Source of the DNA: Mytilus californianus
Lineage: Eukaryota
Direction: 5' to 3'
DNA length: 64,000 nt
NCBI RefSeq assembly: GCF_021869535.1
Contig: NW_026262734.1
Location: forward strand, 102,858,001-102,922,000
A program made the position numbers and the translations under genes. Positions 33,263 to 61,500 of the stretch are shown here, in pieces (position 1 is the first letter of the stretch; each line of letters starts with the position of its first letter). The notes under the pieces were generated by a model, which was not told the DNA's origin, did no database searches, and was given only the letters and a program-made list of their open reading frames with translations.

Positions 33263-34079
33263 TAGGGATCGAAACAGTATTTGGAAGGCCATTTAATTTA
33301 CCTCAATTTAGGATAGACTCTTGAATTTTGAAAAGTCGAACTAGGATGAACGGATCATATAAACCCGAAGGAAAATATACCAACCAGCAACTTTCATATG
33401 TACCGGATCGTCTGAAACAGACGGTAATGCGCAGATAAGGAAAATATTTATAGGAGAGTAATTATATATATACGTTCCATTCGTTGAGGACCGTTTTAAA
33501 TTTACCTTTGAGTTTGGTATTTTTATCATACTTTTTTTTAATAATAATCTTAAAAAAAAAAAAAAAATGAATCAATATTCAACTCAGACCTTGCTGTACT
33601 TTAAGCTTTCCTGGTGTAATGTCGTAAATTCAAGGGAGGTGTCCGTTGTTATTCTGCGTTTACATGTTGTAATGTACTTTAATATTATTCATTCATGCAT
33701 TTCTCTGATCTGACTGTTCTTGTGTTTGTTTGTACTGTATTTCTGTCACAAAGTGTTGTCATTTTAGTGGTATAGTTAACTTTGCCATATATGCGGGAAG
33801 TTTATTTAGCTCTAAAACCAGGTTCAATCCACTATTGTTTTTATAGTCAAGTACCAAGTCAGGACTATGGCAGATGTTATCAAATAGTCCGTTTCTATGA
33901 ATGTTGGTATTTGTTTTTTGTCGCAGTTCAGTGCTTTTGTTGTTCCGTTGATTTACTTAGTTGATATGTTTCCCTCAGTTTTAGTTTTAACCTGGATTTG
34001 TTTTAGAAGGGTGCCCAGTCAACGAATTTGGTCGAGTTGGGTAAACAGAATAACACACGGCTGTATTTGGTATTATTGG

Positions 34080-38779: not shown

Positions 38780-38950
38780 TCTATCAGTTTTTGGTGGGGT
38801 TCGATCGTGTTGCTTAGTCTTTAGTTCTCTATATTGTGTTTTATGTACTTATATTTGTCTGTTTGTTTTTTTCTCTTTTTAGCCATGGCGTTGTCAGTTT
38901 ATTTTCGATCTATGAGTTTGACCGTTCCTACGGTATCTTTCGCCCCTCTT
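38780..38950 (+). mobile_element. Naiad-type 3' tail inserted in the LINE
   Basis: TTTTGGTGGGGTTCG...GGTATCTTTCGCCCCTCTT, identical in type to 39725-39885. Confidence 0.75.
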
Positions 38951-39885: not shown

Positions 39886-41955
39886 AACGAATTATTCATT
39901 GAATTCAAGGATATTCTGCTACCATTCCTAGAGGAAATGTTCAATAGGATATTAGCGTCAGGACTATTTTTCGAAAGCTTGGGCACTCGCAGTGTTAATT
40001 CCTGTTTTTAAAAAAGATGACTCGTCCGATCCAACGAACTATCGTGGAATCAGTTTGGTCAGTAATTTAGCGAAAGTATTTAATCTATTATGAATTCAAG
40101 GCTAATAAAATGGTCTGAGAACAATGATATTATCCACGATGCGCAATTTGGATTTTGCCCTGGTAACAGCACTGTTGATGCAATTTATTGTTTGTTGACA
40201 CTTGTCAAGAAGGCACTTTTCAAGAAAAAAAAAACGTTTATATTGCTGCTTCGTTGACTACAAACAGGCATTTGACTCCGTATCCAGACTTTACTTATGG
40301 TTGAAACTGTGAAGAGTTGGTATAACAGGAAAATTGCTGTCTGTTTTAAAATCAATGTAATCTACAGTAAAAGTATGTGTAAAAATTGATGGTTTTTATT
40401 CTGAGCAGTTTACAAGTCAGGTTGGTCTTATGCAAGGGGAAGTTCTTTCCCCTATACTTTTTTCGTTATATGTCAATGACTTTGAAATGGAATTCCTACG
40501 TAATAGTAATATACCATATGAAGTACAAGATTTATCATTATTTTTTAATATGCACGCTGATGACATCATTTTATTTTCTGATTCAGTTACTGGCTTGCAA
40601 GATATGTTAGACACACTTTTATTATATACTTGTAAATGGGGTTTGACTGAATATATTTCCAAAACAAAAATTATGGTATTTAGAAACGGAGGTTTTGTGA
40701 AAGACGAAGAAATCTGGTATTATGATGGCAATGCTATTGACATAGTGGATGAAATTTGTTACCTTGATGTACTGTTAAATTCTAACGGTAAATTTGTTAA
40801 AGCTCAAAAGCTGAGCAAAGTAGAAAAGCTGTATTTGGTTTAAAGTCGAAGGTTTCGTCATTGTATTTGAATGTTTTTACATATTTGAATTTGTTTGATA
40901 CTTATACTAGGAGTATTCTATGTTAGGGGTGTGATATATGGGGCTTCCATAAACCTCCAAATATTGAAAAAATACAACTTAATTTTTGCAAAAATATATT
41001 AGGTGTCAAACAGTGTACAACAAATGTTATGGTTTATTTTAAATTGGGTAGATATACTTTGATATATTTTAGAATGTACAAAATAGTGACGTACTGGTTA
41101 AAATTATTATCCATAAGCAACTGTATTCTTAAAAACTGTTAAAGGGAACAACTGTATAATTTCTGTAACATAAGAAGCAGTTTGTTTATCAACTACAACA
41201 AGTATTATTTACCTTAGGTTTAAATGAGATTTGGTATAACCAAGACAATTTGATATTTGATACAAATTTATTATTGATTGTAAAAACAAGGATATATGAT
41301 CAAGCAAAACAGACTTTAAATGCTCAAATGAACATTTCATCTTAATGTTATTTATATAAATATATTGTCAATAATGTATGTTTGCAGAATTATCTCACTA
41401 AACATATGAATTTTAGAGTGTATTTAACTCGGCTAAGATTGTCTTCACGTAACTTGTTTGTTGAAGTAGGCCGTTATCATGGAGTAAGTAGATTAGACAG
41501 AAAGTGTACTCTTTGTTCTTTGAATACCACTGAAGATGAATTTCATTTTGTTTTACAATGTGAATGCTATAGAGATTTAAGGATACAGTTTATTAAACCT
41601 TATTATTATAGGCGTCCATCGTCGTTCAAATTAGTTCAACTTCTCAGCATTGAAAATGTCAAAGATTTGCGTAATTTGTGTAAATTATTATTTAATAAAC
41701 TTAATCATAGAACTGAACTCTTAGTGCACAATACTTGTTATTATACTTCATGTCAAAATGCCAGATTTTGATTGGTTAATACGAGGGAGACAATTTACTC
41801 TATCCCATGGCAAATACTCTATTACCCTTCGCGGAGACGCTTGATGAAGTGAGTGTGCGCTTTATTAAATACAGATGATTGTTATGTACATAGTTTATTA
41901 CTTTGAATTTAAAATTTAGTACACAGTAATAACAGAACATTCAGTATAATAAATT

Positions 41956-42091
41956 AAATAACACATAACTGAGAGGGTGATAGAGCAGATTGTTACCCCT
42001 CGAAAAAACATTGTCAACCTTGGCTTCGCCTCAGTTGCCAATGTTTTCTTGTAACAATCTGCTCTATCACCCTCTCAGCTATGTGCTATTT
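41956..42091. mobile_element. Hairpin MITE in the LINE 3' region
   Basis: Arms of about 40 bp ACATAACTGAGAGGGTGATAGAGCAGATTGTTAC and its reverse complement, with an inner stem around GGCTTCGCC. Confidence 0.75.
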
Positions 42092-44784
42092 ATATAATAT
42101 TTATTTGCTTCTCTGATGTATTATGTCATGTTGTGTTATAAAAATGTATTTGTATTTATTGCACTGATAAGCATAATGTGCTTAAAGTTATAAAGAATTG
42201 AATTGAATGTAATAATCTGTAATAATGAATTTTAATCCGAAATCACATATTACAATATAAAACTGTGATAACTAATTCCACAAATTAGTTATCACGAATA
42301 TAATCCGTTATAATCAATTATACAATTCGTTATAGCGCTTTGAATTCTTTATCAAAAATTACAAAAAATTGTGATAACGAATTTAGTTCGTAATTATGAA
42401 TTACAAAATCTGTTATAATGATTTCCACCAATTCGTTATCACAAATTTGATCTGTTATAACAAATCATACAATTCGTGATAACAATTTCAATTCGTGATT
42501 TCGAATTCAAATTTTATTTTAGGAAGGTCTCAAATGGTGGTCACGATTTTCTTAAATTTGGTTCAAAGGTCAAAGCTAAAATTTGAAGGAAAACGCAGAG
42601 TCACGTTTAGACAGCTGCCCGCCCCTTTACATACATGTATATGCGTTTATAGCTAAATAAATGCGAATAATTTAAAGGATTATAACTATAATTTCTATAT
42701 TTAGGACTAATTTGATATTTATGTTGCCAATTATTGTACGAGATTGACAATTGTACATATAGGGAGCACTTTTACAATTATCATTCAGCTGTTAGATAAC
42801 AGTGACCCTGACCTATTAAAATTTCCTAATTTGGAATTTTTACATAAGATACGGATATTTGATGTATGGAATGGTAGCAAATTGTACATGTCTTTGTGGC
42901 AGACTTCATCTGACCTTACCTCATCTACATGGAACATTGATAATGTAAATTTTATGTAATACTTGTATCAATATATAAATAAGGAGATGTGGAAGTAAGC
43001 AGTTATAGGCAACCATACGGCCTTCAACAATGTGAAAAATCCATATAAAAGGCCCAGATATAAAAAATTGACACAATTTAATTGAAAAAAAACTAACGGC
43101 CTAATTTATAACAAAACAATTAACCAAAACATATTTCACAGACATGAACCAACAACAACAACTCAAATTCCGGCTCGATCCTGAATTGGGACAAGCATAT
43201 AAAAAATATATAATCCTTTTCTCTAAGAATTTCGACATAATTCAGTCAGTTTGTTAAACATTCTTTACCAATAGAATACTAGTTTTTACGGTAATGGTGT
43301 TTATAATCATACTTTTCCCAGACGATACATTGATGATGTGCTTTCATTAGCTTTTAGTAAGGTAACGACCAATTGATTTCGATAGGAGGGAGTAGATGAG
43401 GATTTTGAAAATCAATAACTTGGCCTGGTATGAACTGAAAATAAATGACTTCGCAAAAGACCGGATGAAAATGAAACACTGCAACATGAAATGCAAGATA
43501 GTTGAGGATATAAATGTGTACAACAGTAACAAAAAAAAAAAAAAAAAAAAATCGCGCAGCACAGCCTCGGAAAAAAATAAGCATGCGTAGGCAACAGATG
43601 AAAAAAAAGTCAATCCGGAAATTATTTTCATGTTGCCAGCTTGGCACATATAGGTCATTGGTTTCAGTGGTTAGCTCGGACAAACCTATTTCCAATTTAG
43701 CTTTGAAATTATTGCAGTTGTGTCTTCTGGTGTATAATTTATAGCATATACGGTGATACATTTTTGTTGTAATTCACACCGAGGTGGATTTAGGTCGAAA
43801 ACATCATGCATGACTTGATATGCCATATTCCGGATGTGAAACGAAATCGACCGATTTGATTCTTATTCTACAATCATAACAAAACTATCTATTTAATAAA
43901 AAGTTTAAAGTATTGATTAACAGACACAAACCATATTCCTCCTGAGAAAACAATAATTTTCAAAGTTAGCTGGCTATTCAAAACAAATAAATCAACCACA
44001 CAACAAGCAAAGATGAAAAATGTATTGAATGACCACTGTCCTTGTTCATGATCTAATAGTGTAGGCACCAACATAATTAATGTCACGGGAAAATCCGTGT
44101 TTAATCAATGCCAAAATGGTGACTTAATTTGTGTTTTTAATTGCTAATTTCTTCAAAACTATTTTTATTTCACACACGAAATTTGGCAAACACATACACT
44201 CTGTCTTATTGCTTTAATAAAAGTAAAAAACTATCGTGATGACACACGTTATAATTTTCTTTCGATTAGAATATTGTAAATTTCGGGTAAAATTTTAGTC
44301 TTTATAAAATGCTGAAATAATAATACTATAATGACTTAAATATTTTCCTTTTTTTGTTTGTTATATGAAATATTTGAAACATAAACTATATCATAATTAC
44401 AATTTTAACCACCAATAAAGAGCGTTATCATTCTATTTTTCATGTTAAAGATTTCCCGTACAATACGGTATCTGGGGATACTCTGTAAAAACATGAAATG
44501 TAGAAAATCCTGACCATGGGAACTTACGACGACAATCATGATTGTGAAATATAAAGATTTTCCTATAATTTGCAAACAGAAATTGTCGTGTGTTATCCGT
44601 TAACTTAAACTCGTTAACTAGAGGACATTTTTGACACTGGACACCCTACTATTTTTGCTTTATAGATTTATAACTATTGAACAGCGGTATACTACTGTTG
44701 CCTTTATAATAATGGTAATTACCATGCCGCAACATCAAATTTAATTTTGATCTCGATGAATTGAAATATTGTGAAACATATGTA

Positions 44785-46020
44785 GGACTCGGAGGTGCGA
44801 TGGTCAGGCTGAAGTGCGATTGTCACGCTGATATGCGATGGTCTACGCCGAAGTGCGATGGTCCTTTCGGTGAAGTGCGATGGTTTTGCATGACGTTTGG
44901 ATATTGTGACGTTTTCAAATACAACGTCATTAAACTATAAATGAATTCACAGGCAGGAGAATAAGATTTGTAGATGAAGGTTTTGTGCGTACAAAGGAAA
45001 GGGAACAGAATGAAATGAACGATTCAAGTCCCAAACAGTTTTGAGCATTAAAGGTGTAGGTTACAAAAATATGTAAAACTAAGTCAGACAGCAAACCATG
45101 GGGACGAAGGCGGCAAAAGATGATCTTGGTCTGTAGATAGGCTAACCAGTGTTCGGAAGCATGTTTAATGTATGCCGCAAACGTTTTGTACGTCAAATAA
45201 AATGTCTTGATCTTAATATCAATTTTGACTTCTTTTCAAGTATACATCACATGATTGTGTGTGGACAACTTAATAATAAAATAAAATTAAATATTAGCAA
45301 AGTTTTCGTTTTATCAAGTAGCTATAATTTTGTTTTATTCTTGAGATGAATCCTGCTTTGTAAGAAAACATGCAATCTTAGTAATTTTACTGTGTTTACA
45401 GTATTAATTTTCTGTAATGAGTTAGGCCAAAATAAACCCGAATGGTCCAAACTTGGTGTACTTCTCAATTTTGTCTGCTCAGCGGAGAAGCAGCTAATTC
45501 TCAAGCTTTTGACAGAACAAGCTCATTATGAGTCAAGCATAAATGTACTTGATGGTTTTTATTTCTTAAAAACTGTTATGATATCAGATAAATAGATGAA
45601 TGAGTGCTGTGGGCAATTTCTTAGCTATGACATGACAAGAAAAAGTTACTAGTATATTTGATAAAATTAAATGTATCCTGCTTAGTTAGTACTATAGACC
45701 GCCGCGCTGAACCCGTTTTTTTTTTATCGCAATTGAACACTCAATATAAAAACGTGCCCTGCAACTCGAATCCATTATACTTAATCTGAGCCATCCGGTC
45801 CATTTTCCAACTCCATACTGTTGTGTGCTTAGCGAATAATTAGAAAATTAAAAATTAAAGTCTATTGTTTGACCTGACCAGAAATAAAACTCGACTTTCT
45901 TTATGTTAGACTAGCACGCTTACCACTACACCGCCACATTAAAGGGTATTTGAACTTCAGACCCTTGCATTAAGCTAGTATACACAACGTCACACTTAGA
46001 CCATCGCACTTCAGCGTAAT
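44785..46020. mobile_element. Putative TIR element with GAAGTGCGATGGTC subterminal repeats
   Basis: About 5 tandem motifs at 44790-44885 and an inverted motif GACCATCGCACTTC near 46000. Confidence 0.45.
45650..45935 (-). mobile_element. Degenerate tRNA-derived SINE
   Basis: Minus head GGCGGTGTAGTGGTAAGCGTGCTAG (A-box-like). The body resembles 49925-50160. Confidence 0.55.
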
Positions 46021-46214
46021 AATTAGAAAAAATGAATCAATACTCAACTTTCACCTTGCTGTACTTTGAGCAACACATTATATAGAAGTTATTTATTTAG
46101 AAATTCTCTTATTCCATGTTTTCATCATACCAAGAATTAACCAAACAATAAAATTTCAACTCGAAACAACACATCTTAAGACGCAAAAATTGTTCAAATT
46201 ATGATCTTATACAC

Positions 46215-46308
46215 TTTACCTTTAACTTATTATTGACTTTGAAAATATTTTTCTTAACGACCTTGGTTATATTGTGATATGTCAGTGAGGTTGTTCATTC
46301 AGTAAAAC
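46215..46308 (-). pseudogene. Decayed LRR pseudo-exon (FY*MNNLTDIS[22-nt insertion]KNIFKVNNKLKV)
   Basis: 94 nt = 72 + 22, ag|G...AA|gtgtat. It has a premature stop and degraded splice sites. Confidence 0.5.
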
Positions 46309-47510
46309 CTTCGATTTATTTGTGTTAAGAATTAATTGTTTTCCAAATTGGAAGTAATGTTTGTACAAACTGGATTATCGATAGAATGCTGAAAGGTTTA
46401 CAATAGTCTCATTTTAGCTGCATATATTAACTTTGGTAAAGATACGTCGCCATATATTACACTGAATTGTTTTGTACATGATATCAGTTACACTTAAGCC
46501 AAATATCTAAAAAGTAAAATGAAAAAAAAAAATAAATAACGAGGTTCAGGGAAAATTCAAAACTTCGTTTGGTGTGTCCTGGTGTAATGTTGTAAATTCT
46601 TCGGAGATGTCTTTTGTTATTCTGCATTTACATGTTGTAATGTACTTCTATATTATCCATTTATGCATTTCTCTGTTTTGACTGTTCTTGTGTTTGTTTG
46701 TACTGAATTCCTGTCACGCAATGTTATCATTATAGCGGTATTTTTAACATTGCCATATAAGCGGGACGTTTTGTCAGCAATAAAACAACGTTCAACTCAC
46801 CATTTTTCTTAAATAGCCCTGTACCAAGTCAGGACTTTGGCAGTTGTTATCAAATAGTACGTTTCTATGAATGTTGGCGTCTGTTTTTTTTTTTTTTTTG
46901 CAGTTCTGTGTTTCTGTTGTTTCGTTGTTTTGCTCTTATAGTTGATGTGTTTCCTTCAGTTTTAGTTTTAACCCGGATATATTTTTGTTTTATGAATTTA
47001 TCACTATCGAACAGCGATATACAACTGTTGCCTTTATGATAATGTTAATTACCATACCACCATATCAAATTTGATTTTGATCTCGAGTGAATTGAATTAT
47101 TGTGAAACATATTTTTATATTGACAATTATTTTATATTGACAATATGCAATCGATTGTTTCGATTTACAACTTATTTTACGCAATGATAATTGATATCAG
47201 AGTCAATCCTAAACACATTACCTCTCCCTCAGCTTTTACAGATTATCAAAATTAATCAGGAATAGCGAAAATAATACTTTGTTCCACAATTTTGACTATT
47301 TTTATGTTTTCAGAAATAAACAGTAGTATTAAAGTTCAGATTGTCGTAATTATGGTTAATGCATAAATAATATCCTAAGGTCGGTCGACAAATAGTATTT
47401 CAGGAATGATAAACAAACTGTGCATTGAAGATTTCTTCGAAAAAAATGAAGCTTTTAGCCAGCATCGCATTTGATAGTTTTTGGTAGCAGTTATTGATAA
47501 TCAAACTTAC

Positions 47511-47582
47511 AGTACTTGCAAAGCAACGTTGGAGGACAACAGATCAGGTGGCAAAATCGTCAAAGTATTCCTTTGGAGGAAT
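47511..47582 (-). CDS. LRR exon 5: FLQRNTLTILPPDLLSSNVALQVL
   Basis: 72 nt, ttttccttttttaaaag|A...CT|gtaagt, phase 2/2, no stop. Confidence 0.9.
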
Positions 47583-48571
47583 CTTTTAAAAAAGGAAAAA
47601 TATAATAACTTTTTAAGACATAACCAAATAAAAATACAAAATTGAAAAAAAATAAAAGTTCACGCTTCGTTAACGCCAAAATACAGAGGGAATATTTGTG
47701 CATACAAGTAATCAAAAGACAAACAACTGCAATCGATTGTTTCAAATTCTGTTAAAATACTTATATTTGTATTATTGTTTTGTCTTTAGACACAACGTAA
47801 TAGCCGGCTGTCTTCGTCTTATATTTGGGACGATATCAGAAAAAATATTCGTTGAGTGTTTAATACACATTGCATGAATTGTTTGATGTAGTCATTGTGC
47901 ATTGTAATTCACTCGAAAACACAACATGATTCTTTTCATGTCATCTCAAAGAAAAAAATCATGAATTTTATTTTTAATTCCTTTGAACTTCAAAGATAAA
48001 GGCATGGATTTTCCTCCATTGTATTGTATATTAAAATGACACAATTGTTCTCACAAACAACTTTAAAAGCATTATATTGGTTGGTCTGCCTAATAATTCA
48101 AACAAACTCTTCCCAAATGATTAAAATAGTTTCTATCTTATTGCAGTAATAAACCAGTTAGAAGACGTTCTTGACAACTCATAGCCTCTGGCCTTTGTGA
48201 TTCTTGTATGTTTTTTTTTTATTTTAGTTTAATTATGTGTTTTGGGGTTTAGTGTGACGTCCATTTTCTCTGAACTAATACACATTTTAGATAATGGGCC
48301 ATCTGAAGACCGCCTCTAGGTGCGAGATTATCTCGCTGTGTTGAACACCCATTAGTGGCCTTTGGCGGTTTTCTGCTTTTTGGTCGGATTGTTGTCTCTT
48401 TGACACATTTCCCATATCCATTTTCAATTTTATTAATATAAAGCCTATATATTCGAAAAAAATGACCAGGGCAAAGGTTTCCGATACCAACTCAAATATG
48501 AGTATAGCATTTTTTATTAGGTAAATACTATCAACAAACAACGTAAATGAATGAAGTTATGTTCTACTTAC

Positions 48572-48643
48572 AATATTATCAGTGCTACATTGTTCCTTAA
48601 AACACCATCAGGTACGCTAGTTAGATTGTTGTCGTTCAAAGAC
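48572..48643 (-). CDS. LRR exon 4: SLNDNNLTSVPDGVLRNNVALIIL
   Basis: 72 nt, tttttattctcattaag|G...TT|gtaagt, phase 2/2, no stop. Confidence 0.9.
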
Positions 48644-49924
48644 CTTAATGAGAATAAAAAAAAGCAAGCCAATGTTTACTCTTTAATGTCCTATATTTCA
48701 AACACTTACAGAATAAAAGTAGAGTTTATAGGAGATCATAATATATATATAATTACATAGAATGTGTCGATAGTAAAGGAAGAAAGAACCAGAAATAATA
48801 AGGCAATCAAAAACTAATTTTATAGCAACTAACGTATCAACTATGACAACAATATATTACCAGATCATAGACATTTCCAATAAAATGACATACGTACGTA
48901 ACTCGACGTACGGACTTAATGGGACTGTTTTTTTCCAACCATTGAATTTGTTTAAATACGTCGCTCAAGTTTAAACAAAGAATTCCAAGACAAATCACAC
49001 ACAGGAATTTTCGTTTATATAAAATAATTTTAGCATGACGAAAAATAATAGAAATCTTCCATTTTCATTTATCACGTGGTTCTCCAGATTCTTGCCTTTA
49101 GTTTCACTGACAATCATCAGATTACGTATAAACACACGTATTCCATACCTATCATACGATCGATTTGAGTTATCTTTCATGGTTTTGATTATGAAAATTA
49201 TTTTTCAATATACTTTGCAGATGAACGGCCCATTATGTTTATTTTTCGTTATTCGATGTTTTTCTTTCTTTCCTTTTTTCTTCCTTCTCTCTTTCTCTAT
49301 CTTTTTATTATATTTGCTGTTAAAGAAGGATATCATTTCTGACAATATCAGAAATATCGAAACCAGTGTTTGTCAGAATCTTTCTCTTTACAAAAGTTGA
49401 AAACTGAGATAAAACTATCGCTGCCAATTAATGTCTAAACAATAGTATTTTTCGTTCATTATAAAATGTGTTGATAAAAAATTCCCTATATTGGTTGTAT
49501 TGTAGACGGTGTGCCCGATTAAGGATTGTTCTGTGTTGTTTTGTTTTACGAGAATGTAAAGGAGTCCAAATACGAAAGACATTTCCAGGCAATTTTTTTT
49601 TTTTCAATATCCCTTGAAGCAAATTAACTTATAGTATTTTATCAATTTCATTGTCTTAAAAATAAATTATTGGGGGGGGGGGGGGGGGGGGGGGTGTCCA
49701 CAGAATTCGTGTTACTGCATAAATAATTAACGGAAATGTGTTAGGAAAGAAACCTAGAACAACATAAGATAATAAGATTTCGTTGCCAGATGCGGATCCA
49801 GGATTTTGAAAGGGGGATCTAGGCAACGTCAGAAGTAGAATATAAAATATAAGTATTACTAGGATGTAGGTTCATATATATAAATGTTCGTTGCATATGT
49901 ATTTCACATATACATATTTAGGAC

Positions 49925-50160
49925 GAGAAGATGAATATGAACCAGACTTTTTATTATACCGCAGGAAGACATGTCACCCTACTCGGACACATGATTCTGA
50001 CTCCGGACCGAGCCATCTTTGCTCTTACTCCTAAATATTGCGTGCTTGGCAGAGATGCAGTCAATCTTCGATTTGAACCGGGCGAGGATCGAGCCCAATT
50101 CTTCTCTCATTCGAGCAGTTGTGTAGCTTCCATTGACGCAATGAGGCAACAGCCTCATCA
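49925..50160 (-). mobile_element. tRNA-derived SINE
   Basis: Minus strand has a B-box-like GGGCTCGATCCTCG, then GGAGTAAGAGCAAAGA..GGCTCGG..GTGTCCGAGTAGGGTGACATGTC. Confidence 0.65.
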
Positions 50161-51589
50161 AATGTTTGACCATTAAAAAAGAGAGATAAAGAGAAAATAT
50201 ATACCGTGTATTTCATAGTATAGAATATACAGAGTGACGACGGTTCAAAACGTTGACTGCTTTTCTCTTTACTCATTCATTTCTCGTTATTAACGTCTTG
50301 AAAAATATACGTCAAACTTTCTTTCATAAAATGAACACGGTAGAGTCAAATATCTTTTTTTAAGGAACAGACAAGGTATACCTCACAAAAAAAAAAAAAA
50401 TGATTCAAACAAGATGTCATAACTGTGAATCTGACATGATGCTTGATTTCGTTTTTGGCAAACGAACTTGTTACTTTAGGTAGACGTAGTTTTAAACAGA
50501 CACAAGGCATTCCTGCATTTTATGTAGTACTCTTCCTACTGATACGTACCGTGGTTAATATAAGCAAGACTTCATAGTTCACCCAGTTATTGTATTCCAT
50601 GCATTTTGACAAAAGCTAAACGTATGAAGTTAAAAGACATAGTGGATCTTAAACTTTAATATCACTAAATATATACAAAAACATTTTAGAGGAGGTCATA
50701 CATATAATTCTGTCAATTATTTTTTGTTTTGATCAGGACCTGTCTGTAATTGAATACTGAAAAAAGTAAAATCACAAAAATACTGAACTCCGAGAAAATT
50801 ATACCTTTAACCAGCAGTTTCATTAAAATATTTTGATTTAATGCGCACTGAACATATTATTATTTCGTGATAAAATTCCACAAATCTGGATTTTTCATAG
50901 ACAGGATCTTTGTGTCTATCAAAAGTATGGTCACCTACACCCCTCCACCCTTTTTTTTGGGGTGTTTCCTTAGCGTTGCAGGATGTACCAGTATGTACTC
51001 TATAAGATTATATTCAACTTTATAACATGTTTAAAAAGGTCGTCCGTTTGGTTGTCAGGAAAGTATAAATACACAGCCACGTCTAGTAGGAGTAGTGTTT
51101 CAACAAATCTAATGTAGGTGCGTACATTAGTTCTACACGGAACAGAACCAAGGATCCATAGTGGGTCTGTAGCCATACAAAATGTTAGACCCTATGTAAC
51201 ATGCTCTTTTTTCCAGGTACAATTGAAATTTATGCTGTTATCATGGTCGACCTAGTGTACATATCTATTGTATTATTTTGTTTTACTTATCCTGAATATG
51301 CATGCACTTTTTTGTCTCTTAGTGTCCGATAACAACATTCAATTAAATAATAAATCAGACGTGTTTAAAATTATGATTTTTCTTGCATTTGTAAATGCTG
51401 AAAACTATTTTGCGATTCAGACTTTTAACTAACCATCTACTCTCTATTGGCATTGACGTATTTTAACCAAGTTGAGGCTTTGACTGCCAAAATTTAAATC
51501 ATTTGCCTCATCAGCAATGAAATCTAAGGTACGCTACTGTCGATGGATAGATAGTTGGTTGCTTAAAGTCAATGGCAAATATTTCATGC

Positions 51590-51825
51590 ATATTACACGT
51601 GCAGAGAGCGTGGCATTCTTTCTACCAGAAGCATCTAATTTAACGTCTCCACTCTGACCGGAAGTGATTGCGTAGATGTACATCCCGCACAGTCAAACGG
51701 ACGCCCCACTTTGGCAATGGTTTAACTGCTGGTCGGAACAAGACCAATAGTGACCAAATTTCTATTCCCCGGTCAGCCTGGAGGGGTTACTGTCGAGGCG
51801 AGCACGCTACCACAAGACCAAAGCG
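51590..51825 (-). mobile_element. tRNA-derived SINE (mirrored copy at about 52900-53105 on plus)
   Basis: Head TGGTCTTGTGGTAGCGTGCTCGCCTCG and body GGGAATAGAAAT..GGTCACTATTG..GTTAAACCATTGCCAAAGTGG. Confidence 0.65.
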
Positions 51826-54800
51826 ACAATAATGAAAATGGAGGATAATATACATGTACATGTATTAATCAGAACATTTGCAGCAAGAATATGTGGCTTT
51901 AAGACATCGTGCCCCTTCACATGATCATATTTCCATGTGCAGCGGACCACTAAATCCAGGTCAAACTATAAATTGGTATATACTTTTAAACGTTTTATAT
52001 TTTGAACGGAACGGAACGGAAGAACGAACGGATGAACAGACCAGTAAATATCATATCCCTTTGTTATCATAAGTTGGTCATAAAACTAAAATGATCATCC
52101 TACTTCAAAACGTCATTCAAATATTCCGTACATGTCCGTTTTTCATACGTATTTGCATAAGTTAAACGCCAAACATTTTAGAAAAGCAATTTAAGAGCAA
52201 TGAAGTTAAATTACGCATACGTTTGTACGGACTCTTCCTAGAATCAATGCATCATTATAATTAAAGACAAGAAGTAAAAATGTTAACTGATTCAGTAAAG
52301 TGTAATCATATTTTTGCTTGACGATGCGTCCTCATAATTCCATTTGGTAAAATTCTACGGAATGGTGACAAACAACTACCAGAAAGATGCATCAGTGATC
52401 TGAATTACTACCTCTAACAAAAGTTTCTTGAAACAAATAAAGAAGTATGCTAAAAAAAAAAGAAAAAACAATTCATGTACACCTTTTACATTCCGGCGTG
52501 TTTGAAACTCTTGTTTTAATCTTATAACTTATAAATAAAAAATTAGAATATCATCTCGATTCAAATTCCACTATTTTTATTTTTTGATACTTTTAAAATT
52601 TTGATTTGGTAGTTTAAGAAATCACTGTTTGAGAGATAAATATATGGGTCAAGTGAAATGATAAAGTAATGATCGGTGCATTTGATTACCGGTAACTGAA
52701 TTAGTTATTCCCTTGAAAGGTTGTTATCAATAAAATCATTTCAAATTTAATAATAAAATATGTAAAGAATGAAAATAGCAGATTACGCTAATTTTTAAAT
52801 AGCATCTGTTCCAACAAAGTATGTGTATTCAACGAGTCAAAAATCCATGCAGTCTATGCTACCTACCGTCATCCATCAATGCAATAGGCCGACATACGGT
52901 CAGATGGGTTGGTTATGCCGAGTAATGACATTTTTATTCTAAAAGATGATCAAGGGAATAGAAATATGGTCACTATTGATCTTGTTCCGTTAAACCATTG
53001 CCAAAGTGGATAGTTCGTTTAGATGTGCGGGATGTACAAGTACGCAGTCCCGTCCGTTTAGAGTTGGGACGTTAAAACCGATGACTCTTTTAGATATAAT
53101 GTCACGCTCTCTAAATGTTAATATTACATGAAATATATGCAACTGGACGTTGACCAACCAACTATCAATCAATCGACAGTAGCGTAACTTGAATTTTATT
53201 TCTGGTGAGGCAAATGATTAAAACTTGGCAGATAAAAGCCTCACTTTGGTTTAAAGACGTCAATGCCAGTAGGGAGTGGACGGTTACTTGAAAAAATGAA
53301 TCGCAAAATAGGTGTAGGTGATCATACACTTGATAGGTCAAACAATAGCAACAAGATACTATTTATGAAAAATCCAGATTTGTGGAATTCTATCATGAAA
53401 TAATATTTCTAGTGCGCATTTAATCAATATATTTCAATGAAACTTCTGGTTAAAGGCTTAATTCTCAGTATTCGGTTAAGTATTTAGAATTCAGATAGGT
53501 TCCTGATAAAAAAAAATGACAGAATTATATGTATTACCTCCTCTAAGATGATTTTGTACAGATTTGGGGATACGACTAAGTTTAAGATCCACTATGTCTC
53601 TTAACTTATACGTGTAGCTTTTGTCAACATGTATTGATGATAATAACTGGGAGAACTATTTAGTCTTGCTCATGTTAAACATGATAGAAGAGTACTACAT
53701 AAAATGTAGGAATGCCAAGTGTCTGTTGAAACTTTACCCACCAAAAGTAACAAGTTCGTTGTCAAAAAATTAAAAAAAAAAAGCAAGCATCATATCAGTT
53801 TCACAGTTATGACCTCATGTTTGGATCAGTTTTTTGCGAATTATACTTTGTCTGTTACTTAAAAAATATATTTGTATCTACCTTGTTCATTCTAAATTGC
53901 ATCTTGGATCCGCATGTGGCAACGAAATCTTAATATATAATGTTCTTCAATGTTACTTACCTTACACATTTCCGTTAATGATTTCTTCATTAAAATGAAT
54001 TCGGTAACCCCGCTTTTAGTTATTTATCAATAAAATGGATAAAATGCTCTAAATTAGTTCACTTCAAGGGATATCAAATCTATTCCCTGGAAATATCTTT
54101 TGTATTTGGACTTCGATAGCATTCCCGTTAAACAAATCAATACAGAACAATCCCTAATCGAACACACCTTAATTCTATTAAAAAAAACAACATATATAGG
54201 AATTTCGTTATCAATAAATTTTATAATAAATGAAAAATACTTTTGTTAATAAATTAAAAAGAAGCGATAATTTTATCTGAATTGTTAACATTTATAAAGA
54301 GACAGATTCTGAAAAATTCTACTTTCGATATTTCTGAAAATGTCAGAAACATATCCTTCTAAATATTTTCCCCGCATCAAATATAATAAAAAAGATAGAT
54401 AAACTATAAAGAAAGACAGAAAAAAATATAATGGGGCGTTCATCTGCAAAGTATATTGAAAAATAATTGTCATAATCAAAAACATGAAAGATAACTCGAA
54501 TCGTACGTATGATAGGTATGGGATACAATACGTGATCTTATGTCAGTAAAATAAAGGCGGGAATCTGGAAAACCATAAACGAAAATGCAATATTTCTATC
54601 ATTTTTCGTTATGATAATTTATTTTTATAGGGTCGAAAATTCCAATGTGTGATTTTAAAAGTCTTGGAATTCTTTGTTTAAACTTAAGCGACGTATTTAA
54701 TCAAACTCGATGGTTGGCAATAATCCGTCCCATTAGGTTCGTACGTCTAATTACGTACGTATGTCATTTTATTGGAAATCTCTATTATAATGTGCCTGTT

Positions 54801-55799
54801 ACTTCACAAACTAGTGCTGATGACAGCTATTTGACTTTTTTATTTCATGTTTTCATAACGTCTATTTTGCTTAATGCATGTTAATAACACCTAACTTTTT
54901 CAAGACTGTGTGTTCCCCTTCAGAAAAGTTTTAAATCATTGTAATGTTAGGTCGCTGAGGTTTTCACAAAATCATTGTATTGATCGTTGTAATTTCGTAC
55001 TATAAATTTAAATGCTGAAGAAACCTCTTATGTGTAAGTAATAAATAATATTCCCCAACAGCTTCCAAAAAGGGAAACATGATGGCATAAATGTTAACTG
55101 GATACATTTAAACTTTATACCAAACTTCACAATAAAGTACATCAACTTTTTCGTTGGCGTCTTTGTTAAATTCATGTGTAGGTTTGTTTTAATTTTTTAG
55201 TCAGTTGTGTTGTATGTCTGTGACCTATGTTTTCATAAGTTTTCGCTGCTGAATCCAAATTAAAGTCACATTAACCTATAACATCTGTTTGAGTCGCTCA
55301 CCCAATTTTGTCAATATAATGGAACTATAAACAAATGTCATACGATTAGGAGTTTAGGCTAGCTCGAACACCAGGTCTAACTCACTATTTTTTCAGAGAA
55401 TACCTTTACCAAGTCAGGAATATGACAGGTTTGTTACACTCGTTCCGTTTGTTGATGACGTTTAATTTGACAGCTTTTATTGACTTTCCCCTTTTCTAAT
55501 TTACCTAAGTATTTTTATTATACTGTTTTTTTTTAGAATAATAACAAAAATGAATCAATACACAACTTTGACCTTGCTGTACTTTAAGCAAATGTTTTCA
55601 GAAATAAACAGTAGTATCAAAGTTCAGACTGTCGTAATTATGGTTAATGCATAAATAATATCCTAAGGTCGGTCAAGAAATAGTATATCAGGAAACATAA
55701 ATAAACCTTGCATTGAATATTTCTGCGAAAAACTTGAAGCTTTTTGCCAGCATGGCATTTGATATTTTTTGGTAGCAGTTATTGATAATCAATACTTAC

Positions 55800-55871
55800 A
55801 GCAATTTCAAAGCAACGCTAGAGGTCAACAGATCACGTGGCAAAATCGTCAAAGTATTCATGTGAATGTAT
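55800..55871 (-). CDS. LRR exon 3: YIHMNTLTILPRDLLTSSVALKLL
   Basis: 72 nt, tctttcctttttattaaaaag|A...CT|gtaagt, phase 2/2, no stop. Confidence 0.9.
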
Positions 55872-56807
55872 CTTTTTAATAAAAAGGAAAGATTGATAAC
55901 TTTTTTAAAGACAGAATCAAATGTAAATACAAAAATAAAAAAAAAATAAAAGTTCACGCTTCATTTACATGATTAACGCCAAAAATAGAGAAAGTATTTA
56001 TGCATACAAGTACTCAAAAGAAAAAAAAGAGAACTGCGATCGATTGTTATTTTACGTTATAATAATTGATTTCAGAGTTAACCCTAAACACACTACTTTT
56101 CTCTCAAATATTACAGATTATCAAAATGAATCAGGAATAGCTAAAAGTAAATTTGTTCCACAATTTTGAACTATCATGTATCAACGTCACCAGAGGATTA
56201 TATAATTGATAGGATTGACATATGAAAGATAAATTGAATTATAACCGAAAGAGTGTGCTATAAGACTATTCTCATGTCTCATATCTAACGATTGCTAATG
56301 AGTGTTTTTTGTCCGTATAAACACGAGTTTTAAACGCTGTTAATAGATATAAGAAGATGAAGTATGAGTGCCAATGAGACAACTCTCCATCCAAGACACA
56401 ATTTACAAAAGTAAACCATTAAAAGTCACAGTACGGTGTTCAACACGGAGCCTTGGCTCACACCGAACAGCAAGCTATAAAGGGCCCCAAAAATGACTAG
56501 TGTAAAACCATTCAAACGGGAAAACCAACGGTCTAATCTATATAAAAAACGAGAAACGAAAATCACTTATGAACAACATCAACAAACGACAACTACTGAA
56601 CATCAGATTCCTGACTTAGGAAAGTGCAAACATGAACAGTAGTGACATAAAAAAACAAATGATGTAAATAGATTCATCTTAAAAACTTCAAACATAATCG
56701 GGTTTTGATAACGACTGAAAAGCTTCATTCAAGTAAAAAACCATGACGAATAATATACGGGTTTATCATATTTACCTAAAACAACATTTGAATTAAAGCG
56801 TGGGCTA

Positions 56808-57152
56808 ATAGTTATCAAAGGTAACAGGCTTATAATTTAATACGCCAGACGCGCGCTTCGTCTACATAAGACTCATCAGTGACGCTCAGATCAAAATAGT
56901 TAGAAAGCCAATCAAGTATAAAGTTGAAATGCATTTATGACACAAAATTCCAAAAAGTTGTGCCAAATACGGCTAAGGTTATCTATGCCTGGGAAAGAAA
57001 ATCCTTAGTATTTTGAATAGTTCATACTTTTGCAAACAGTTAATTTATAAAAAATGACCATATAATTTATATCCATGTCAACACCGAAGTACTGACTACT
57101 GGGCTGGTGATACCCTCGGGGACGAAACGTCCACCAGCAGTGGCATCGACCC
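56808..57152 (-). mobile_element. Near full-length retrozyme-like monomer (about 345 bp) with type I hammerhead (56842-56885)
   Basis: GCGUCA CUGAUGA GUC-uuaugua-GAC GAAG CGCGCG UC UGGCGU, with an A15.1-to-G change. A branched stem-loop lies at 57095-57152. Confidence 0.75.
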
Positions 57153-58239
57153 TGAAAACCTGCCTTGTCTTTGTCGCACCCAACAATCGAAAGACAATCT
57201 AAATTTTTCACATTATATGTCAAAACAACTCTAAAAAATAGCGTAAGTCACATCTCAAATCCTAGATCTGCTCATATTTTGTCAATTAGCCATACATATC
57301 AAAGGGGTATACGATGAACGGATAAAGCATTTTGGATGACCTATGTCTATTATCATAGTTTGTACATGTTGTATATTTTGAGAGAATAAAAACAGATAGC
57401 GCAACTACGTGTAATGACAACTATATTTACTATTGCCATAGTTGAAATAATGTTTGCAATTCTTTAAATTTTGTTATTTATACTTATACTTATATTACTG
57501 TCGTTAGAAAAAAACTTAATAGCCGGCTGTCTTCGTCTTATTTTTCGGAGGATATCAGAAAGCATATTCGTTGAGTGTTTAATCCAAATTGCATAAATTG
57601 TTTTATGAAGTCATTGTGCATAGAAATTCACTCGGAGACAAAACATTTTTCCTTTTATGTCTTCTTACAAAAAAAAAAATCCGGAATCCTGTTTTTAATT
57701 CATTTTAATTTCAAAGATAAAGGCATGGATCTTCCTCCATTGTATTGTATACTTAAATGACATATATTTTCTCACAAACAACCTTAAAAGCATTATATTG
57801 GGTGGTCTGTCAAATTATTCAAACAAACTCTTTCAAAATGAGTATAGACGTTTGTATCTTATTGTAGCAATAAACCATTTAGAAGACGTTCTGGATAACT
57901 CATGGCCTATGGCCTTTCTTAGTCTTGTATGATTTTTTAATTTGAGTTCATTTATATGTTTTGGAGTTAAGGGTGACATCCATTTTGTCTGAACTAGTAC
58001 ACATTTTAGTTTGGGGGCCAGCTGAAGCTCGACTCCGGTTGCGGGATTTCCTAGCTGTGTTGAAGAACAATTAGTGGTCTTGGGCTGTTTTCTGATCTTT
58101 GGTCGGATTGTTGTCTCTTTGACACATTCCCATGTACTTAGATTAAAATGTGTTTCTTTCGAAAAGAACAATTTAAACTTTTTTTAAAATCTTTTTTGTC
58201 GAAATCAAGATTTTCGCATGATTTATTTACTGACAATAT

Positions 58240-58600
58240 ATTTTCAATGTACAATTGGAAATCCGATGGAAACTCACTGTGATCCTCTTTCAACGTGATT
58301 CTTTATTCACTTGAGTCATAAGTTATACAGGGGGATTATAAGAAATCAACACAATTCTTTAACTGCGAGTTTCGCTATTTCGATACTGTCCTCTTATTTT
58401 AGGATTCGAAAGTTTGGTGACTTTGCTAAACTCAACTTCGTTATCAAACTAAAAAGGATACTGCAAAAACTTATCTAGACTTATATTTAAAAAATGATCA
58501 GGATTATTGATAACAAAGGTGTAAATCAAGATTGATGATTTCAGATTTTAATTGTGATGTTTCCATTTCTATGTAGCAACGTTGTAGCAGCGTTTCATCT
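58240..58600 (+). mobile_element. Highly degenerate Naiad-type RT fragment
   Basis: Remnants of the FRY..D.L and YLDL..DDF.F.IV.FPFLCSN segments. Confidence 0.5.
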
Positions 58601-59897
58601 ATAGCATAAATCTGCGAGAGGAAACGAAAAATAAGAGCTTTGATTTCATTTCAAATAATTCCAAAATATAGTGTAACTGCTTAAAATGAAACTTTTATTG
58701 AATGGTTCAAAGAAGTGAAAAGTTAAAAAAAAAATAATATCAAACTCCATGGATAATTAATAACGGAAAGTCCCTTATCAAATGGCAAAATAAAACTCTC
58801 AAACACAACAAACTAATAAAAAACAAATGTCATAATGAAGACTTGGTTCAGGCATTTCCGTTTGTAGAAACTGGTGGATTAATTTTGAAAATTTAACGGA
58901 TGTAATCATGAGATTTTTTTATCGTTATGGATGATCTGTGTCACTGATGACCACCAAAATGTTTCAGTTGTCGGAACAACAATCCTCTCGTCTTGTCTCG
59001 ATTGTCACATATTTTAACTAAATATTAACGAATAAGAATAGTCACTAACATGAGTTACGCGACGGGTTCCACAAATGGAACAACTAATTGCTACCTGTCT
59101 GGAGCGACTGTGATCACCTCCAGTGTAAGATTTGTATTGCTCATCTTCAGTTTTCATATGTAGTGTTGTGTACAAAGTTGTTCGTTTTCTGTTTTTACCA
59201 TTGTTTTGTCGGTTTCTGATCGACTCATGAATTATGATTGTCGCATCAATATTTGTCGTCTAAGCGCAATAACGAACTGGTTAGTATTTTTACATTCATG
59301 TTCAAATTTTCATTTACTGGTTTTAACTTGGATCAACAATTCAATGTGAACGGTTTCTCGCAAGAGTGACGTACGTCAGCAAAATGAAGATAATGTTATG
59401 ATTCATTTTTTCAATTATATAAAAAAGGTTCCTTGTTTAATCATGTATATAATCTGATGATAGTGCTCAAAACAAACACACATGCAAATAATTTTTATCT
59501 TTTTTCTCTGTCTTTCCTTTTTCTATATTATTTGTTAGTATACCTCTTTAATAACAGATGTCTGATTAGAACAATGTAATCATGAATCTGATATTTGAAA
59601 GCTTTGAATTCTATTGATCAATATTGTATCTTATGATAAGACAATCAAAGTGGGACTAAATTGTGTTTAATACTTTTTTGCAAATAAATATGTTTAAACT
59701 AAAAAGAAACTTACTTCTCATTTGTATACTTAATGTTTCTACATGAAGCCAATATGTTTGAGAAAAAAAAACAATGACCAGGGCAAAGGTTTGCAAAGCC
59801 AAAGTTGAATCAAAAGATGAGCATAGCAAATTTTTTATTGGGTAAATACTATCCTGTCAACAAACAACGTATATGATTGAAGATATGTTCTACTTAC

Positions 59898-59969
59898 AAA
59901 ATTATCAATGCTATGTTGTTCCTGAAAACACCACCAGGTACGCTAGTAAGATTGTTGTTGTCCAAAAAC
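59898..59969 (-). CDS. LRR exon 2: FLDNNNLTSVPGGVFRNNIALIIL
   Basis: 72 nt, ttttttgttcttatttag|G...TT|gtaagt, phase 2/2, no stop. Confidence 0.9.
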
Positions 59970-60671
59970 CTAAATAAGAACAAAAAAGACAAGCCAATGA
60001 TTACTCCTAATTGTCCTAGATTTCAAACACTACAGAAATACTTACAGAAAAAATGAGGCAACCAAAAAGTAATTCAATAGCAACTAACGTATTAATTCTA
60101 TCAGCAATTTATCACAATATCTGCATTCAAAAGTGCCTCTAGAAAACGAATAGTTACCAGTCGTCAAACGATGTTCTTATTTAATAAAATGATTTGAATA
60201 AACAAGGCAAAATTAAAAGTCAACATTGTCAGTGGCTGGTTGCCTTACAACAGATGTTGGTTGTCTTATGTCCTATCATTATGTGCTTGTTACTAATATA
60301 GCACCATTTTTTTTCTTTCTAGTTCATTTATTCATAACGTCTGTATTGTAAATGCATGTTATTGACATCTGGTTTTTGTCGTGGCTGTTTGTTATCCTTG
60401 TGATAAGGTTTAGTTAATTGTGATGTTTGGTCGCTCAACATGATTTCAATCCTAACATAATAGAAAGAAAATTATGAATCTTGTTTTTTTAATTCCCTTA
60501 AACTTCAAATATGTAGAAATGAATCTTATTTCACTGTATAGGTTACCAAAATGACATAAGTTCCCAAGTTGAATCATAAGATTGGGATAAGAAATTATTC
60601 ATAAGGCAAATGCTATTATCATGATTATGACAGTAAACATACTAACATGATTACAATTATTTTGAACTTAC

Positions 60672-60743
60672 AAAGATTCCAATGCCAAGTTGTTCTTGAA
60701 AACATCATCAGGTAAACTAGAAAGATTGTTGCTCGATAAATCC
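60672..60743 (-). CDS. LRR exon 1 (most 5' found): DLSSNNLSSLPDDVFKNNLALESL
   Basis: 72 nt, tttttttttatgtag|G...TT|gtaagt, phase 2/2, no stop. Confidence 0.92.
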
Positions 60744-61111
60744 CTACATAAAAAAAAAACCATACCATTTTTTTCAATAAAATGTTTTGTTTTAAGCTTC
60801 GAAAACTTGCAGCAAACTGATGAAGTACTTAAAGGAGAGTAATTCTTTTGTATACAAGTCCCTTTGAACTGACAAACTGTACGTACCAGTTGTTAAACGA
60901 TCTTTTTCATTGTATTTATATATGATTTGAATAAACAAGCCACCATTAAGATGGATAACCTTGTCATTTGCTGGTTATTTTCTAACAGGTGTTGATTGTC
61001 TTATGTCCACTTATAATGTAGCTGTTACTTGACAAAGTGGTCAGGTTTCAGCTATTTGTCCTTTTATTCAAAATGTTTGATTTGTTTGATGCCTGATCAT
61101 GACATTTTTAA

Positions 61112-61500
61112 GGATGTTCGCTACTCTGTTTCAAAATAACAAGCTTTTTAAAAGACTGTTATAAATTGATAGTATATAAAGAAACAAACAAAAACGCAGA
61201 AAAAATGAAGGGTCCGTGTGCTTGTTTAAGAGATATAAGCCATTAAAAATTTGGCGGAAAATAAATCTCTCTAGACTTTTCATACATTAAACAACGGCAC
61301 CCTTTTTCATTCTAAAAATATGACAAAAATAAATAGGATTTTATAGGATTTATAAATATGGCTTATTTAACTTTATGTAATAAAATTGTGAAAAGAAAAG
61401 TAGGGGTTAGCGGGGAAATTTGTGTAATGCCACTACATGGATAACACCAGAGAATTACGAATACCTGGCAAAAATTTAAAAACAAGAGGAGCGAACATCT
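61112..61500. mobile_element. Kolobok-type non-autonomous element
   Basis: TTAA on both flanks (61108-61111, 61501-61504). TIR (G/A)GATGTTCGCT. Confidence 0.75.

What the first reader, a model, noticed from the sequence alone, without database searches (positions are those of the whole stretch)
46030..61100. LRR array extended by tandem duplication of a two-exon cassette
Seen: intronic DNA around exons 2+3 (55547-60460) is colinear with that around exons 4+5 (47140-48860 plus 54795-54960). A further partial copy (60480-61100) surrounds exon 1. The protein accordingly alternates LTSVP-type and LTILP-type repeats. Short offcuts of the same intronic segment recur at about 33566, 44600-44785 and 46030. 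Inference: unequal crossing-over of whole exon-plus-intron blocks adds solenoid turns without frameshift, because all introns are phase 2.
Basis: partly seen in the sequence, partly recalled or inferred. Interest (0 to 1): 0.7.

Follow-up and report, generated by a model that had tools for sequence, protein, structure and literature searches.

The report
Two-exon LRR cassette duplicated in tandem
A minus-strand gene for a leucine-rich-repeat protein, in which every 24-residue repeat is its own 72-base exon, gained two extra repeats when a block of two exons plus their introns was copied head-to-tail long ago; this is a clear but ordinary example of a well-known way such genes grow.

Summary
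Five 72-nt, phase-2 LRR exons lie on the minus strand at 60743-60672, 59969-59898, 55871-55800, 48643-48572 and 47582-47511.

Unit B (55589-60435) and unit A (47148-48866 plus 54790-55030) each carry an LTSVP exon and an LTILP exon. They share about 1.7 kb of colinear intron DNA at 82-86% identity.

That DNA is not a dispersed repeat. The LTILP block and the inter-exon intron occur only three times in the 1.65 Gb genome: A, B and one paralogue 6.7 Mb away.

- The "exon 1" at 60743 is the fourth coding exon. The real first exon lies outside the window.
- The 5.9 kb splitting A is a later transposon insertion.
- The 1.3 and 1.6 kb "extra" in B were deleted from A.
- One block is not colinear.
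- The partial copy at 60462-61114 is an older family cassette.

The duplication is old (K2P about 0.17) and cannot be ordered relative to the gene duplication. Replacements cluster on predicted ligand-facing positions.

No RNA test was possible. The scan had already noted the same exon layout on other DNA of this genome (s1-340015, s1-302513). This is a known kind of event and of modest interest.

The parts
59898..59969 (-). LTSVP-type LRR exon of unit B (72 nt, phase 2-2)
   Evidence: ag|72 nt|gtaagt, open in the phase-2 frame, peptide FLDNNNLTSVPGGVFRNNIALII. Pfam LRR_8 E 0.011 for the single repeat.
55800..55871 (-). LTILP-type LRR exon of unit B
   Evidence: 72 nt, ag/gtaagt, peptide YIHMNTLTILPRDLLTSSVALKL.
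48572..48643 (-). LTSVP-type LRR exon of unit A
   Evidence: 72 nt. 86% identical to the B exon, with 4 synonymous and 6 replacement changes.
47511..47582 (-). LTILP-type LRR exon of unit A
   Evidence: 72 nt. 83% identical to the B exon, with 3 synonymous and 9 replacement changes.
60672..60743 (-).
   Evidence: LRR_8 E 0.0013. Its orthologue in paralogue P groups with it at 94/90 support.
55589..60435 (-). Duplication unit B (the long, ancestral-like form)
   Evidence: Colinear with A and colinear with the single cassette of paralogue P over nearly its whole length.
47148..48866 (-). Duplication unit A, part on the low-coordinate side of the transposon
54790..55030 (-). Duplication unit A, upstream intron part beyond the transposon (54837-54956 matches B 60316-60435)
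   Evidence: Also found in paralogues Q and R next to segment x.
48867..54788 (.). 5.9 kb transposon with long inverted arms, inserted into unit A after the duplication
   Evidence: Inverted arms. Terminal inverted repeats, with flanks that rejoin colinearly with B. Thousands of candidate copies genome-wide.
55030..55592 (.). Intron segment x at the B-to-A junction. It holds an old dispersed repeat (55123-55535).
   Evidence: The same segment lies next to the same neighbours in paralogues Q and R.
56175..57458 (.). Segment present in B and in paralogue P but missing from A (a deletion in A)
58134..59767 (.). Second segment present in B and P but missing from A
47148..47299 (.). Non-colinear block. 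It lies downstream of the LTILP exon in A, whereas its counterpart 56047-56174 lies upstream of it in B and in P.
48183..48434 (.). SINE-like dispersed repeat inherited by both units (B copy at 57905-58133)
   Evidence: many 250-bp copies at about 87% across the genome. The alignment between A and B runs straight across its boundary.
60462..61114 (-).
   Evidence: It is shared with paralogue P, so it predates the gene duplication.
46017..46563 (.).
   Evidence: It is contiguous with x in paralogues P, Q and R.
46562..47037 (.). High-copy dispersed repeat z beside unit A (other copies at 33609-34004, 18208-18598 and 3247-3613)
33379..33606 (.).
44650..44781 (.). Stray 130-bp copy of the end of z plus 75 bp of cassette flank
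   Evidence: 88% to 46980-47112; 90.7% to paralogue P.

Best explanation
A minus-strand gene encodes a signal peptide, a cysteine-rich N-cap, at least 13 LRRs, a cysteine-rich C-cap and a stalk. Every LRR is a separate 72-nt exon bounded by phase-2 introns.

A segment containing one LTSVP exon, the intron after it, one LTILP exon and the flanking intron DNA was duplicated in tandem, giving units B and A. All exons are 72 nt and phase 2-2, and the split junction codon always reads Leu or Val. The copy therefore added two solenoid turns in frame.

After the duplication, A lost 1.3 and 1.6 kb of intron and gained a 5.9 kb transposon. B lost the z-y intron segment. One block, 47148-47299 in A and 56047-56174 in B, lies on opposite sides of the LTILP exon in the two units.

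The exon copies diverged mainly at predicted concave, ligand-facing positions, while the scaffold residues and splice sites stayed intact.

Shown: the colinearity, the copy numbers, the exon structure and the divergence. Inferred: the mechanism (unequal crossing-over or a replication-based tandem duplication) and that both copies are spliced into the mRNA.
For: - Colinear HSPs at 82-86% identity across about 1.7 kb, with E-values down to 0.
- The LTILP block and the inter-exon intron occur only in A, B and paralogue P in the whole genome.
- K2P is similar across blocks: 0.155, 0.181, 0.199 and 0.157.
- {A, B, P} form a 100/100 clade among 15 LTSVP-type cassettes and a tight cluster among the LTILP-type ones.
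- P has one cassette and is colinear with B over 4.5 kb.
- The transposon flanks in A rejoin colinearly with B, and the element is a dispersed family.
- All exons are 72 nt with ag/gtaagt.
- The junction codons are Leu at 10 and Val at 4 of the 14 junctions (the last reads GTA once the LRRCT exon start is set to -34208).
- 8 of 12 concave positions differ between A and B, against 7 of 34 others; Fisher p 0.009.
- There are no dead exon copies in the window.
Against:
- The order of the cassette duplication and the gene duplication is unresolved: A-B 0.168, A-P 0.173, B-P 0.187.
- In the inter-exon intron, polarised sites lean towards A+P. The array may therefore have been two units before the paralogue split, or gene conversion may have mixed the copies.
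- One block is not colinear (47148-47299 versus 56047-56174). A single clean unequal crossover does not explain it.
- The x-w junction between B and A also exists in older paralogues Q and R, so it was not created by this event.
Confidence: 0.85

Rival explanations
1. The two-unit array is older than gene G. The common ancestor of G and paralogue P already had units A and B, and P later lost one by unequal crossing-over, leaving a chimeric cassette.
For: - The three-way divergence is close to a trichotomy.
- In the inter-exon intron, A is closer to P (0.131) than to B (0.181).
- Polarised sites favour A+P: 7:3:3 with outgroup Q and 9:4:1 with outgroup R.
- P has B-like long introns but an A-like downstream flank, z-y.
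Against: - The LTILP block favours A+B (0.155 against 0.192 and 0.198).
- Tree support inside the clade is weak: 80/47, and unresolved.
- The counts are small and the outgroups are not independent.
Confidence: 0.35
2. The intron similarity comes from independent insertions of the same transposon families around unrelated exons.
For: Three shared pieces are dispersed repeats: 48183-48434 / 57905-58133, 46562-47037 and 55123-55535.
Against: - The remaining roughly 1.3 kb of aligned DNA has only three copies in 1.65 Gb.
- The blocks keep order and orientation.
- The alignment runs uninterrupted across the boundary between unique DNA and the SINE-like element.
Confidence: 0.02
3. Two separate single-exon duplications, one of the LTSVP exon and one of the LTILP exon, happened to recreate the alternating pattern.
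For: Single-exon cassette duplication does occur in this family. Paralogue P has four 2.4 kb units at 97% identity, and about 57 LTSVP-type cassettes exist genome-wide.
Against: The intron between the two exons is duplicated colinearly with both of them, and its divergence (K2P 0.18-0.20) is close to that of the exon blocks (0.155-0.157).
Confidence: 0.05
4. The duplication is an assembly artefact, with two haplotypes placed in tandem.
For: None found.
Against: - The units differ by 15%.
- They also differ by a 5.9 kb transposon, two kilobase-scale deletions and a rearranged block.
- These differences far exceed what haplotypes would show.
Confidence: 0.01

Closest known systems
Gonadotropin (LH/FSH/TSH) receptor genes, whose LRR ectodomain is built from similar-sized exons with all introns in phase 2
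   Same: One LRR per exon of about 72 nt, all introns in phase 2, and growth attributed to duplication of a prototype exon (as summarised in PMC11378527, citing Koo 1991 and Kobe & Deisenhofer 1994).
   Different: No seven-transmembrane exon was found downstream here. The LRR array is followed by a cysteine C-cap exon and a Thr/Pro-rich stalk exon. Here the intron homology of the duplicates is still visible. Membership was not established.
Brown-algal ROCO genes with shuffled 72-bp phase-2 LRR exons (PMC11378527)
   Same: Exons of exactly 72 bp, phase 2, 23 whole codons plus split codons, and variable residues on the concave face.
   Different: An unrelated protein architecture (cytoplasmic LRR-ROC-COR versus a secreted or surface protein with cysteine caps) and an unrelated lineage. 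The likeness is in mechanism, not descent.
[quoted passage not shown]
   Same: Fixed-length exons, more than 98% phase-2 introns, exon-plus-intron repeat units, and expansion ascribed to unequal crossing-over, with transposons nearby.
   Different: 90-bp versus 72-bp exons, and thousands of genes there. The event here is a single old two-exon duplication in an animal gene family of modest size (about 57 cassettes).
Other 72-nt single-repeat-exon LRR genes of this same genome, noted earlier by the scan (s1-340015, s1-302513)
   Same: The same exon layout and the same genome. One note also reports fast change at ligand-facing residues.
   Different: They are different loci. One is an LRR-TSP1 gene with many dead exon copies, whereas no dead exon copies occur in this window. 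I did not re-test those notes.

Membership tests
Leucine-rich repeat proteins (typical 24-residue LRR) | Tandem 24-residue repeats with the LxxLxLxxNxL core | tested here: met
All seven in-window exon peptides carry xLxxNxLxxLPxxxFxxNxxLxx. Pfam LRR_8 matches two single exons at E 0.0013 and 0.011, below the gathering score as expected for one repeat.
Extracellular LRR proteins with cysteine caps (LRRNT/LRRCT) | A signal peptide and a cysteine-cluster N-cap before the repeats, and a cysteine-cluster C-cap after them | tested here: inconclusive
   Exon 1 (L016:8636-8823, minus strand) reads as a hydrophobic leader followed by a C..C..C..C cluster. The exon after the last LRR (L021:5650-5792, minus strand) reads DCRKCFDCDC...C...C and is 92% identical at protein level in paralogue P. 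Pfam gave no hit for either piece and the protein atlas gave none. The caps are read by eye only.
Tandem duplication of symmetric exons (exon-plus-intron cassette duplication) | Duplicated exons of equal length flanked by introns of the same phase | tested here: met
   All are 72 nt, phase 2 on both sides, with Leu or Val junction codons.
Tandem duplication of symmetric exons (exon-plus-intron cassette duplication) | Flanking and intervening introns of the copies are homologous, colinear and locus-specific | tested here: met
   There is one non-colinear block (47148-47299).
Tandem duplication of symmetric exons (exon-plus-intron cassette duplication) | Both copies are included in the mature mRNA | not testable with these tools
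Only the intact frames and the ag/gtaagt signals speak for inclusion.
Glycoprotein-hormone / LGR receptor genes | A rhodopsin-type seven-transmembrane domain encoded downstream of the LRR exons | tested here: not met
   No open frame of 90 aa or more with that character lies on the minus strand in the 52 kb (to -80000) downstream of the last LRR exon. The conserved exons found there are a C-cap and a stalk. A GPCR-like ORF on the plus strand at about 108.5 kb (window-equivalent coordinate, upstream) is a separate gene.
Dispersed transposon copies (rival for the intron homology) | Many copies scattered over the genome | tested here: not met
   It is met only for 48183-48434, 46562-47037, 55123-55535 and 48867-54788. 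It is not met for the rest of the aligned DNA, which has three copies.

The most novel reading that the evidence does not exclude
Every LRR exon in this gene, and in its roughly 57-cassette family, is 72 nt and phase 2-2, and any junction yields Leu or Val. Any subset of exons could therefore be skipped or re-duplicated in frame.

The family may be a fast-diversifying recognition repertoire in which three things create receptor variety between individuals or transcripts:
- ongoing cassette gain and loss, as in the 97%-identical units in paralogue P;
- change focused on the concave face;
- possibly combinatorial exon skipping.
Probability: 0.15. Interest if true: 0.55.

Novelty: new member of a known kind. 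Interest (0 to 1): 0.3.

Why it matters
This is a clean, datable example of how a solenoid protein gains turns. The intron homology is still readable, an outgroup paralogue fixes the ancestral form, and the replacements that followed concentrate on ligand-facing positions.

It adds an animal (mussel, according to earlier notes) case to a pattern described for vertebrate hormone receptors, brown algae and ciliates. It does not change the understanding of the mechanism.

Its practical value is for annotation. Gene finders tend to miss or mis-join 72-nt exons spread over about 107 kb from the start codon to the C-cap exon, with introns up to 26 kb.

Tried and rejected
I did not try another route.
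- Naming the protein. Pfam on single exons and on the two cap exons gave only weak LRR_8 hits. The protein atlas gave nothing for the C-cap exon. The joined spliced model was deliberately not built for any search, and the big protein searches were not spent on 23-residue pieces.
- NAHR between flanking repeats as the cause. Segment x at the junction has no partner upstream of B, and the x-w junction is older than the gene. No repeat-mediated mechanism could be shown.
- A w-like intron upstream of the 31136 exon. Finding one would have fixed the far end of unit A, but none was found.
- Resolving the order of A, B and P. Distances, trees and polarised sites all gave a near-trichotomy.
- A VLR-like unassembled cassette reading. 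I rejected it on sight. The exons lie in order on one strand, each with canonical splice sites, between a leader/N-cap exon and a C-cap exon.
Full report
**Setting**

The window is G000:C154:102858001-102922000 of a 1.65 Gb, 175-contig genome. Its GC content is about 32%. Earlier follow-up notes on other pieces of this genome call it a mussel, Mytilus. I did not test that, but the genome size and composition are consistent with it.

**The gene**

A scan for ag|exon|gt units that are open in the phase-2 frame finds seven 72-nt exons on the minus strand of the window:
- 60743-60672
- 59969-59898
- 55871-55800
- 48643-48572
- 47582-47511
- 31136-31065
- 25721-25650

None is found on the plus strand. 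All have a pyrimidine-rich acceptor and a gtaagt donor. Each begins with the third base of a codon and ends with two bases of the next, so it is phase 2 on both sides.

The peptides fit xLxxNxLxxLPxxxFxxNxxLxx. Two single exons reach Pfam LRR_8 at E 0.0013 and 0.011.

I fetched the flanking chromosome. In window-equivalent coordinates, the array continues upstream with exons at 64682 and 68418 and with a first exon at 72823-72636. That first exon encodes a hydrophobic leader and a cysteine cluster and ends in phase 2. Downstream, the array continues with 72-nt exons at -307, -18840 and -26626 and a 78-nt exon at -27648. A cysteine-rich C-cap exon follows at -34208 to -34350, and is 92% identical at protein level in the paralogue. 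A Thr/Pro-rich stalk exon lies near -39700.

Every junction codon in the array reads Leu (10 junctions) or Val (4 junctions). The last junction reads GTA once the C-cap exon start is set to -34208.

**The duplication**

The self-BLAST and the repeat finder show unit A (47148-48866 plus 54790-55030) colinear with unit B (55589-60435).

| Unit A | Unit B | Identity |
|---|---|---|
| 47304-47741 | 55592-56048 | 84.5% |
| 47736-48415 | 57459-58133 | 82.7% |
| 48456-48713 | 59768-60037 | 82.7% |
| 48790-48866 | 60045-60121 | 79% |
| 54837-54956 | 60316-60435 | 75% |

The 5.9 kb between 48867 and 54788 has long inverted arms and terminal inverted repeats. Its flanks rejoin colinearly with B, and it belongs to a family with thousands of candidate copies. 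It is a transposon that entered A after the duplication.

**Is the homology unique DNA or repeats?**

I searched the whole genome with unit A.

- The LTILP block (47304-47741) and the inter-exon intron (47759-48180) occur only in A, in B and at one paralogous gene, P, 6.7 Mb away at C154:109.6 Mb.
- The 250-bp stretch 48183-48434 (57905-58133 in B) is a SINE-like dispersed repeat. The A-B alignment runs straight across its boundary and P has it at the same place, so it was inherited, not inserted independently.
- Three other stretches are dispersed repeats: 46562-47037, 55123-55535 and the 5.9 kb element.
- The LTSVP exon with about 400 bp of flanking intron has about 57 copies at 66-75% identity. 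All lie in clusters of the same gene family: C154:53.27-53.33 Mb, C154:109.27-109.65 Mb, C57, C13, C35 and C24. That is family-level cassette homology, not a transposon.

The refutation therefore fails for the main blocks.

**What the paralogue shows**

P (loci L011-L015) has a single LTSMP+LTILP cassette. It is colinear with B over about 4.5 kb, including B 56175-57458 and 58134-59767, which A lacks. These segments are therefore deletions in A, not insertions in B.

P and B also share the position of the 150-bp block 56047-56174 upstream of the LTILP exon. In A the homologous block (47148-47299) lies downstream of it. This one non-colinear block is not explained by a simple unequal crossover. 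I leave it open; a complex or multi-step rearrangement would account for it.

**Timing**

On 1317 columns shared by all three copies, K2P is 0.168 for A-B, 0.173 for A-P and 0.187 for B-P. The site patterns are 105, 100 and 85.

- In a tree of 15 LTSVP-type cassettes, {A, B, P} form a 100/100 clade with no resolved inner order.
- The LTILP tree gives the same tight cluster.
- With outgroups, the inter-exon intron leans towards A+P: 7:3:3 and 9:4:1.
- The LTILP block leans towards A+B.

The cassette duplication and the G/P gene duplication are therefore about equally old. Their order is unresolved, and a two-unit ancestor with loss in P, or gene conversion, cannot be excluded.

The four aligned blocks, one of them the shared SINE-like element, have similar divergence (0.155-0.20). 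This argues for one event that copied both exons together. At 15% divergence, and with different indels in the two units, an assembly or haplotype artefact is excluded.

**The partial copy and the offcuts**

Cassette C (60462-61114, exon 60743) has its own orthologue in P (94/90 support) and a relative in paralogue R. It is an older LTSVP-type cassette that keeps only the proximal part of the inter-exon intron. It is not a recent by-product of the A/B event.

In paralogues P, Q (C154:53.27 Mb) and R (C35:27.3 Mb), the segments x (55030-55592) and y (46017-46563) are contiguous. In Q and R, x is also followed by w (54790-55030) and then an LTSVP-type exon. P has no w after x.

In this gene:
- B is followed by x-w and then the LTSVP exon of A.
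- A is followed by z-y, then a 12.4 kb insertion complex (33607-46016, which includes LINE reverse-transcriptase fragments at 40361-41768), and then the remnant of x at 33379-33606.

The repeat period was therefore w / LTSVP exon / intron / LTILP exon / z / y / x, and B later lost z-y.

- The offcuts at 33566 and 46030 are pieces of this ancestral intron.
- 44650-44781 is a stray copy of the end of z plus 75 bp of unique flank.

Next to the first of these, 33609-34004 is a copy of the high-copy repeat z.

**After the duplication**

The exon copies are no better conserved than the introns (86% and 83% identity). However, the changes are not spread evenly. 8 of the 12 predicted concave-face positions (exon-peptide positions 1, 3, 4, 6, 22 and 23) differ between A and B, against 7 of 34 other positions (Fisher p 0.009). 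For B-P the p value is 0.0002.

Scaffold residues, exon length and splice signals are intact, and the window holds no decayed exon copies. This fits two functional repeats that diverged in ligand-facing residues.

**Comparison with what is known**

Fixed-length LRR exons bounded by phase-2 introns, multiplied by exon-plus-intron duplication, are documented in three systems:
- gonadotropin receptor genes;
- brown-algal ROCO genes, which also have 72-bp exons and positive selection on the concave face (both in PMC11378527);
- Tetrahymena 90-bp exon arrays, where unequal crossing-over is proposed (PMC6564038).

The scan had already recorded the same layout in two other genes of this genome (s1-340015, s1-302513) and a second duplication in this window (s1-342967). 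I saw that second duplication as 22203-26378 versus 26765-32265, with twin exons at 25721 and 31136.

**Verdict**

The finding is a correct and well-preserved instance of a known process.

Noticed in passing
L014-L015 (C154:109644401-109652273): The paralogue P carries four head-to-tail copies of a 2.4 kb single-exon unit (ISNNILTSVP-type exon) at about 97% identity. This exon-cassette amplification is much younger than the one in the window, so the process is recent or ongoing in the family.
   Followed up: partly
window 22203-32265: A second tandem duplication of the same gene (22203-26378 versus 26765-32265, 70-86% identity) carries the twin NNIDSLP exons at 25721 and 31136. Further downstream, outside the window, IDSLP and FTxL exons alternate again, which suggests another two-exon cassette.
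   Followed up: partly
window 5713-7050 and 11631-12960: Two direct repeats of 1.34 kb at 99.2% identity lie 5.9 kb apart, with internal tandem repeats of about 190 bp. This may be the LTR pair of a young retroelement or a very recent local duplication.
   Followed up: no
window 9708-10498: A tandem array with a period of about 169 bp and 89-94% identity between units, open in two frames by chance of its repetitiveness.
   Followed up: no
window 33607-46016: A 12.4 kb block of nested insertions splits an intron segment that is contiguous in three paralogues. It includes LINE-type reverse-transcriptase fragments at 40361-41768 and inverted repeats at 34118-34414 / 42214-42537.
   Followed up: partly
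L028 (window-equivalent 108550-109455, plus strand, outside the window): An intronless 302-aa open frame with the look of a seven-transmembrane receptor lies about 36 kb upstream of the LRR gene on the opposite strand. It is a separate gene.
   Followed up: no
L021 (window-equivalent -32980 to -33400, minus strand): A 48-nt-period minisatellite, open in several frames and conserved in position in the paralogue P, lies in the intron between the last LRR exon and the C-cap exon.
   Followed up: no
window 21874-22220 and 22662-23008: Two direct repeats of 347 bp at 98.6% identity lie 788 bp apart, next to the integrase-derived tandem array reported as s1-342918.
   Followed up: no
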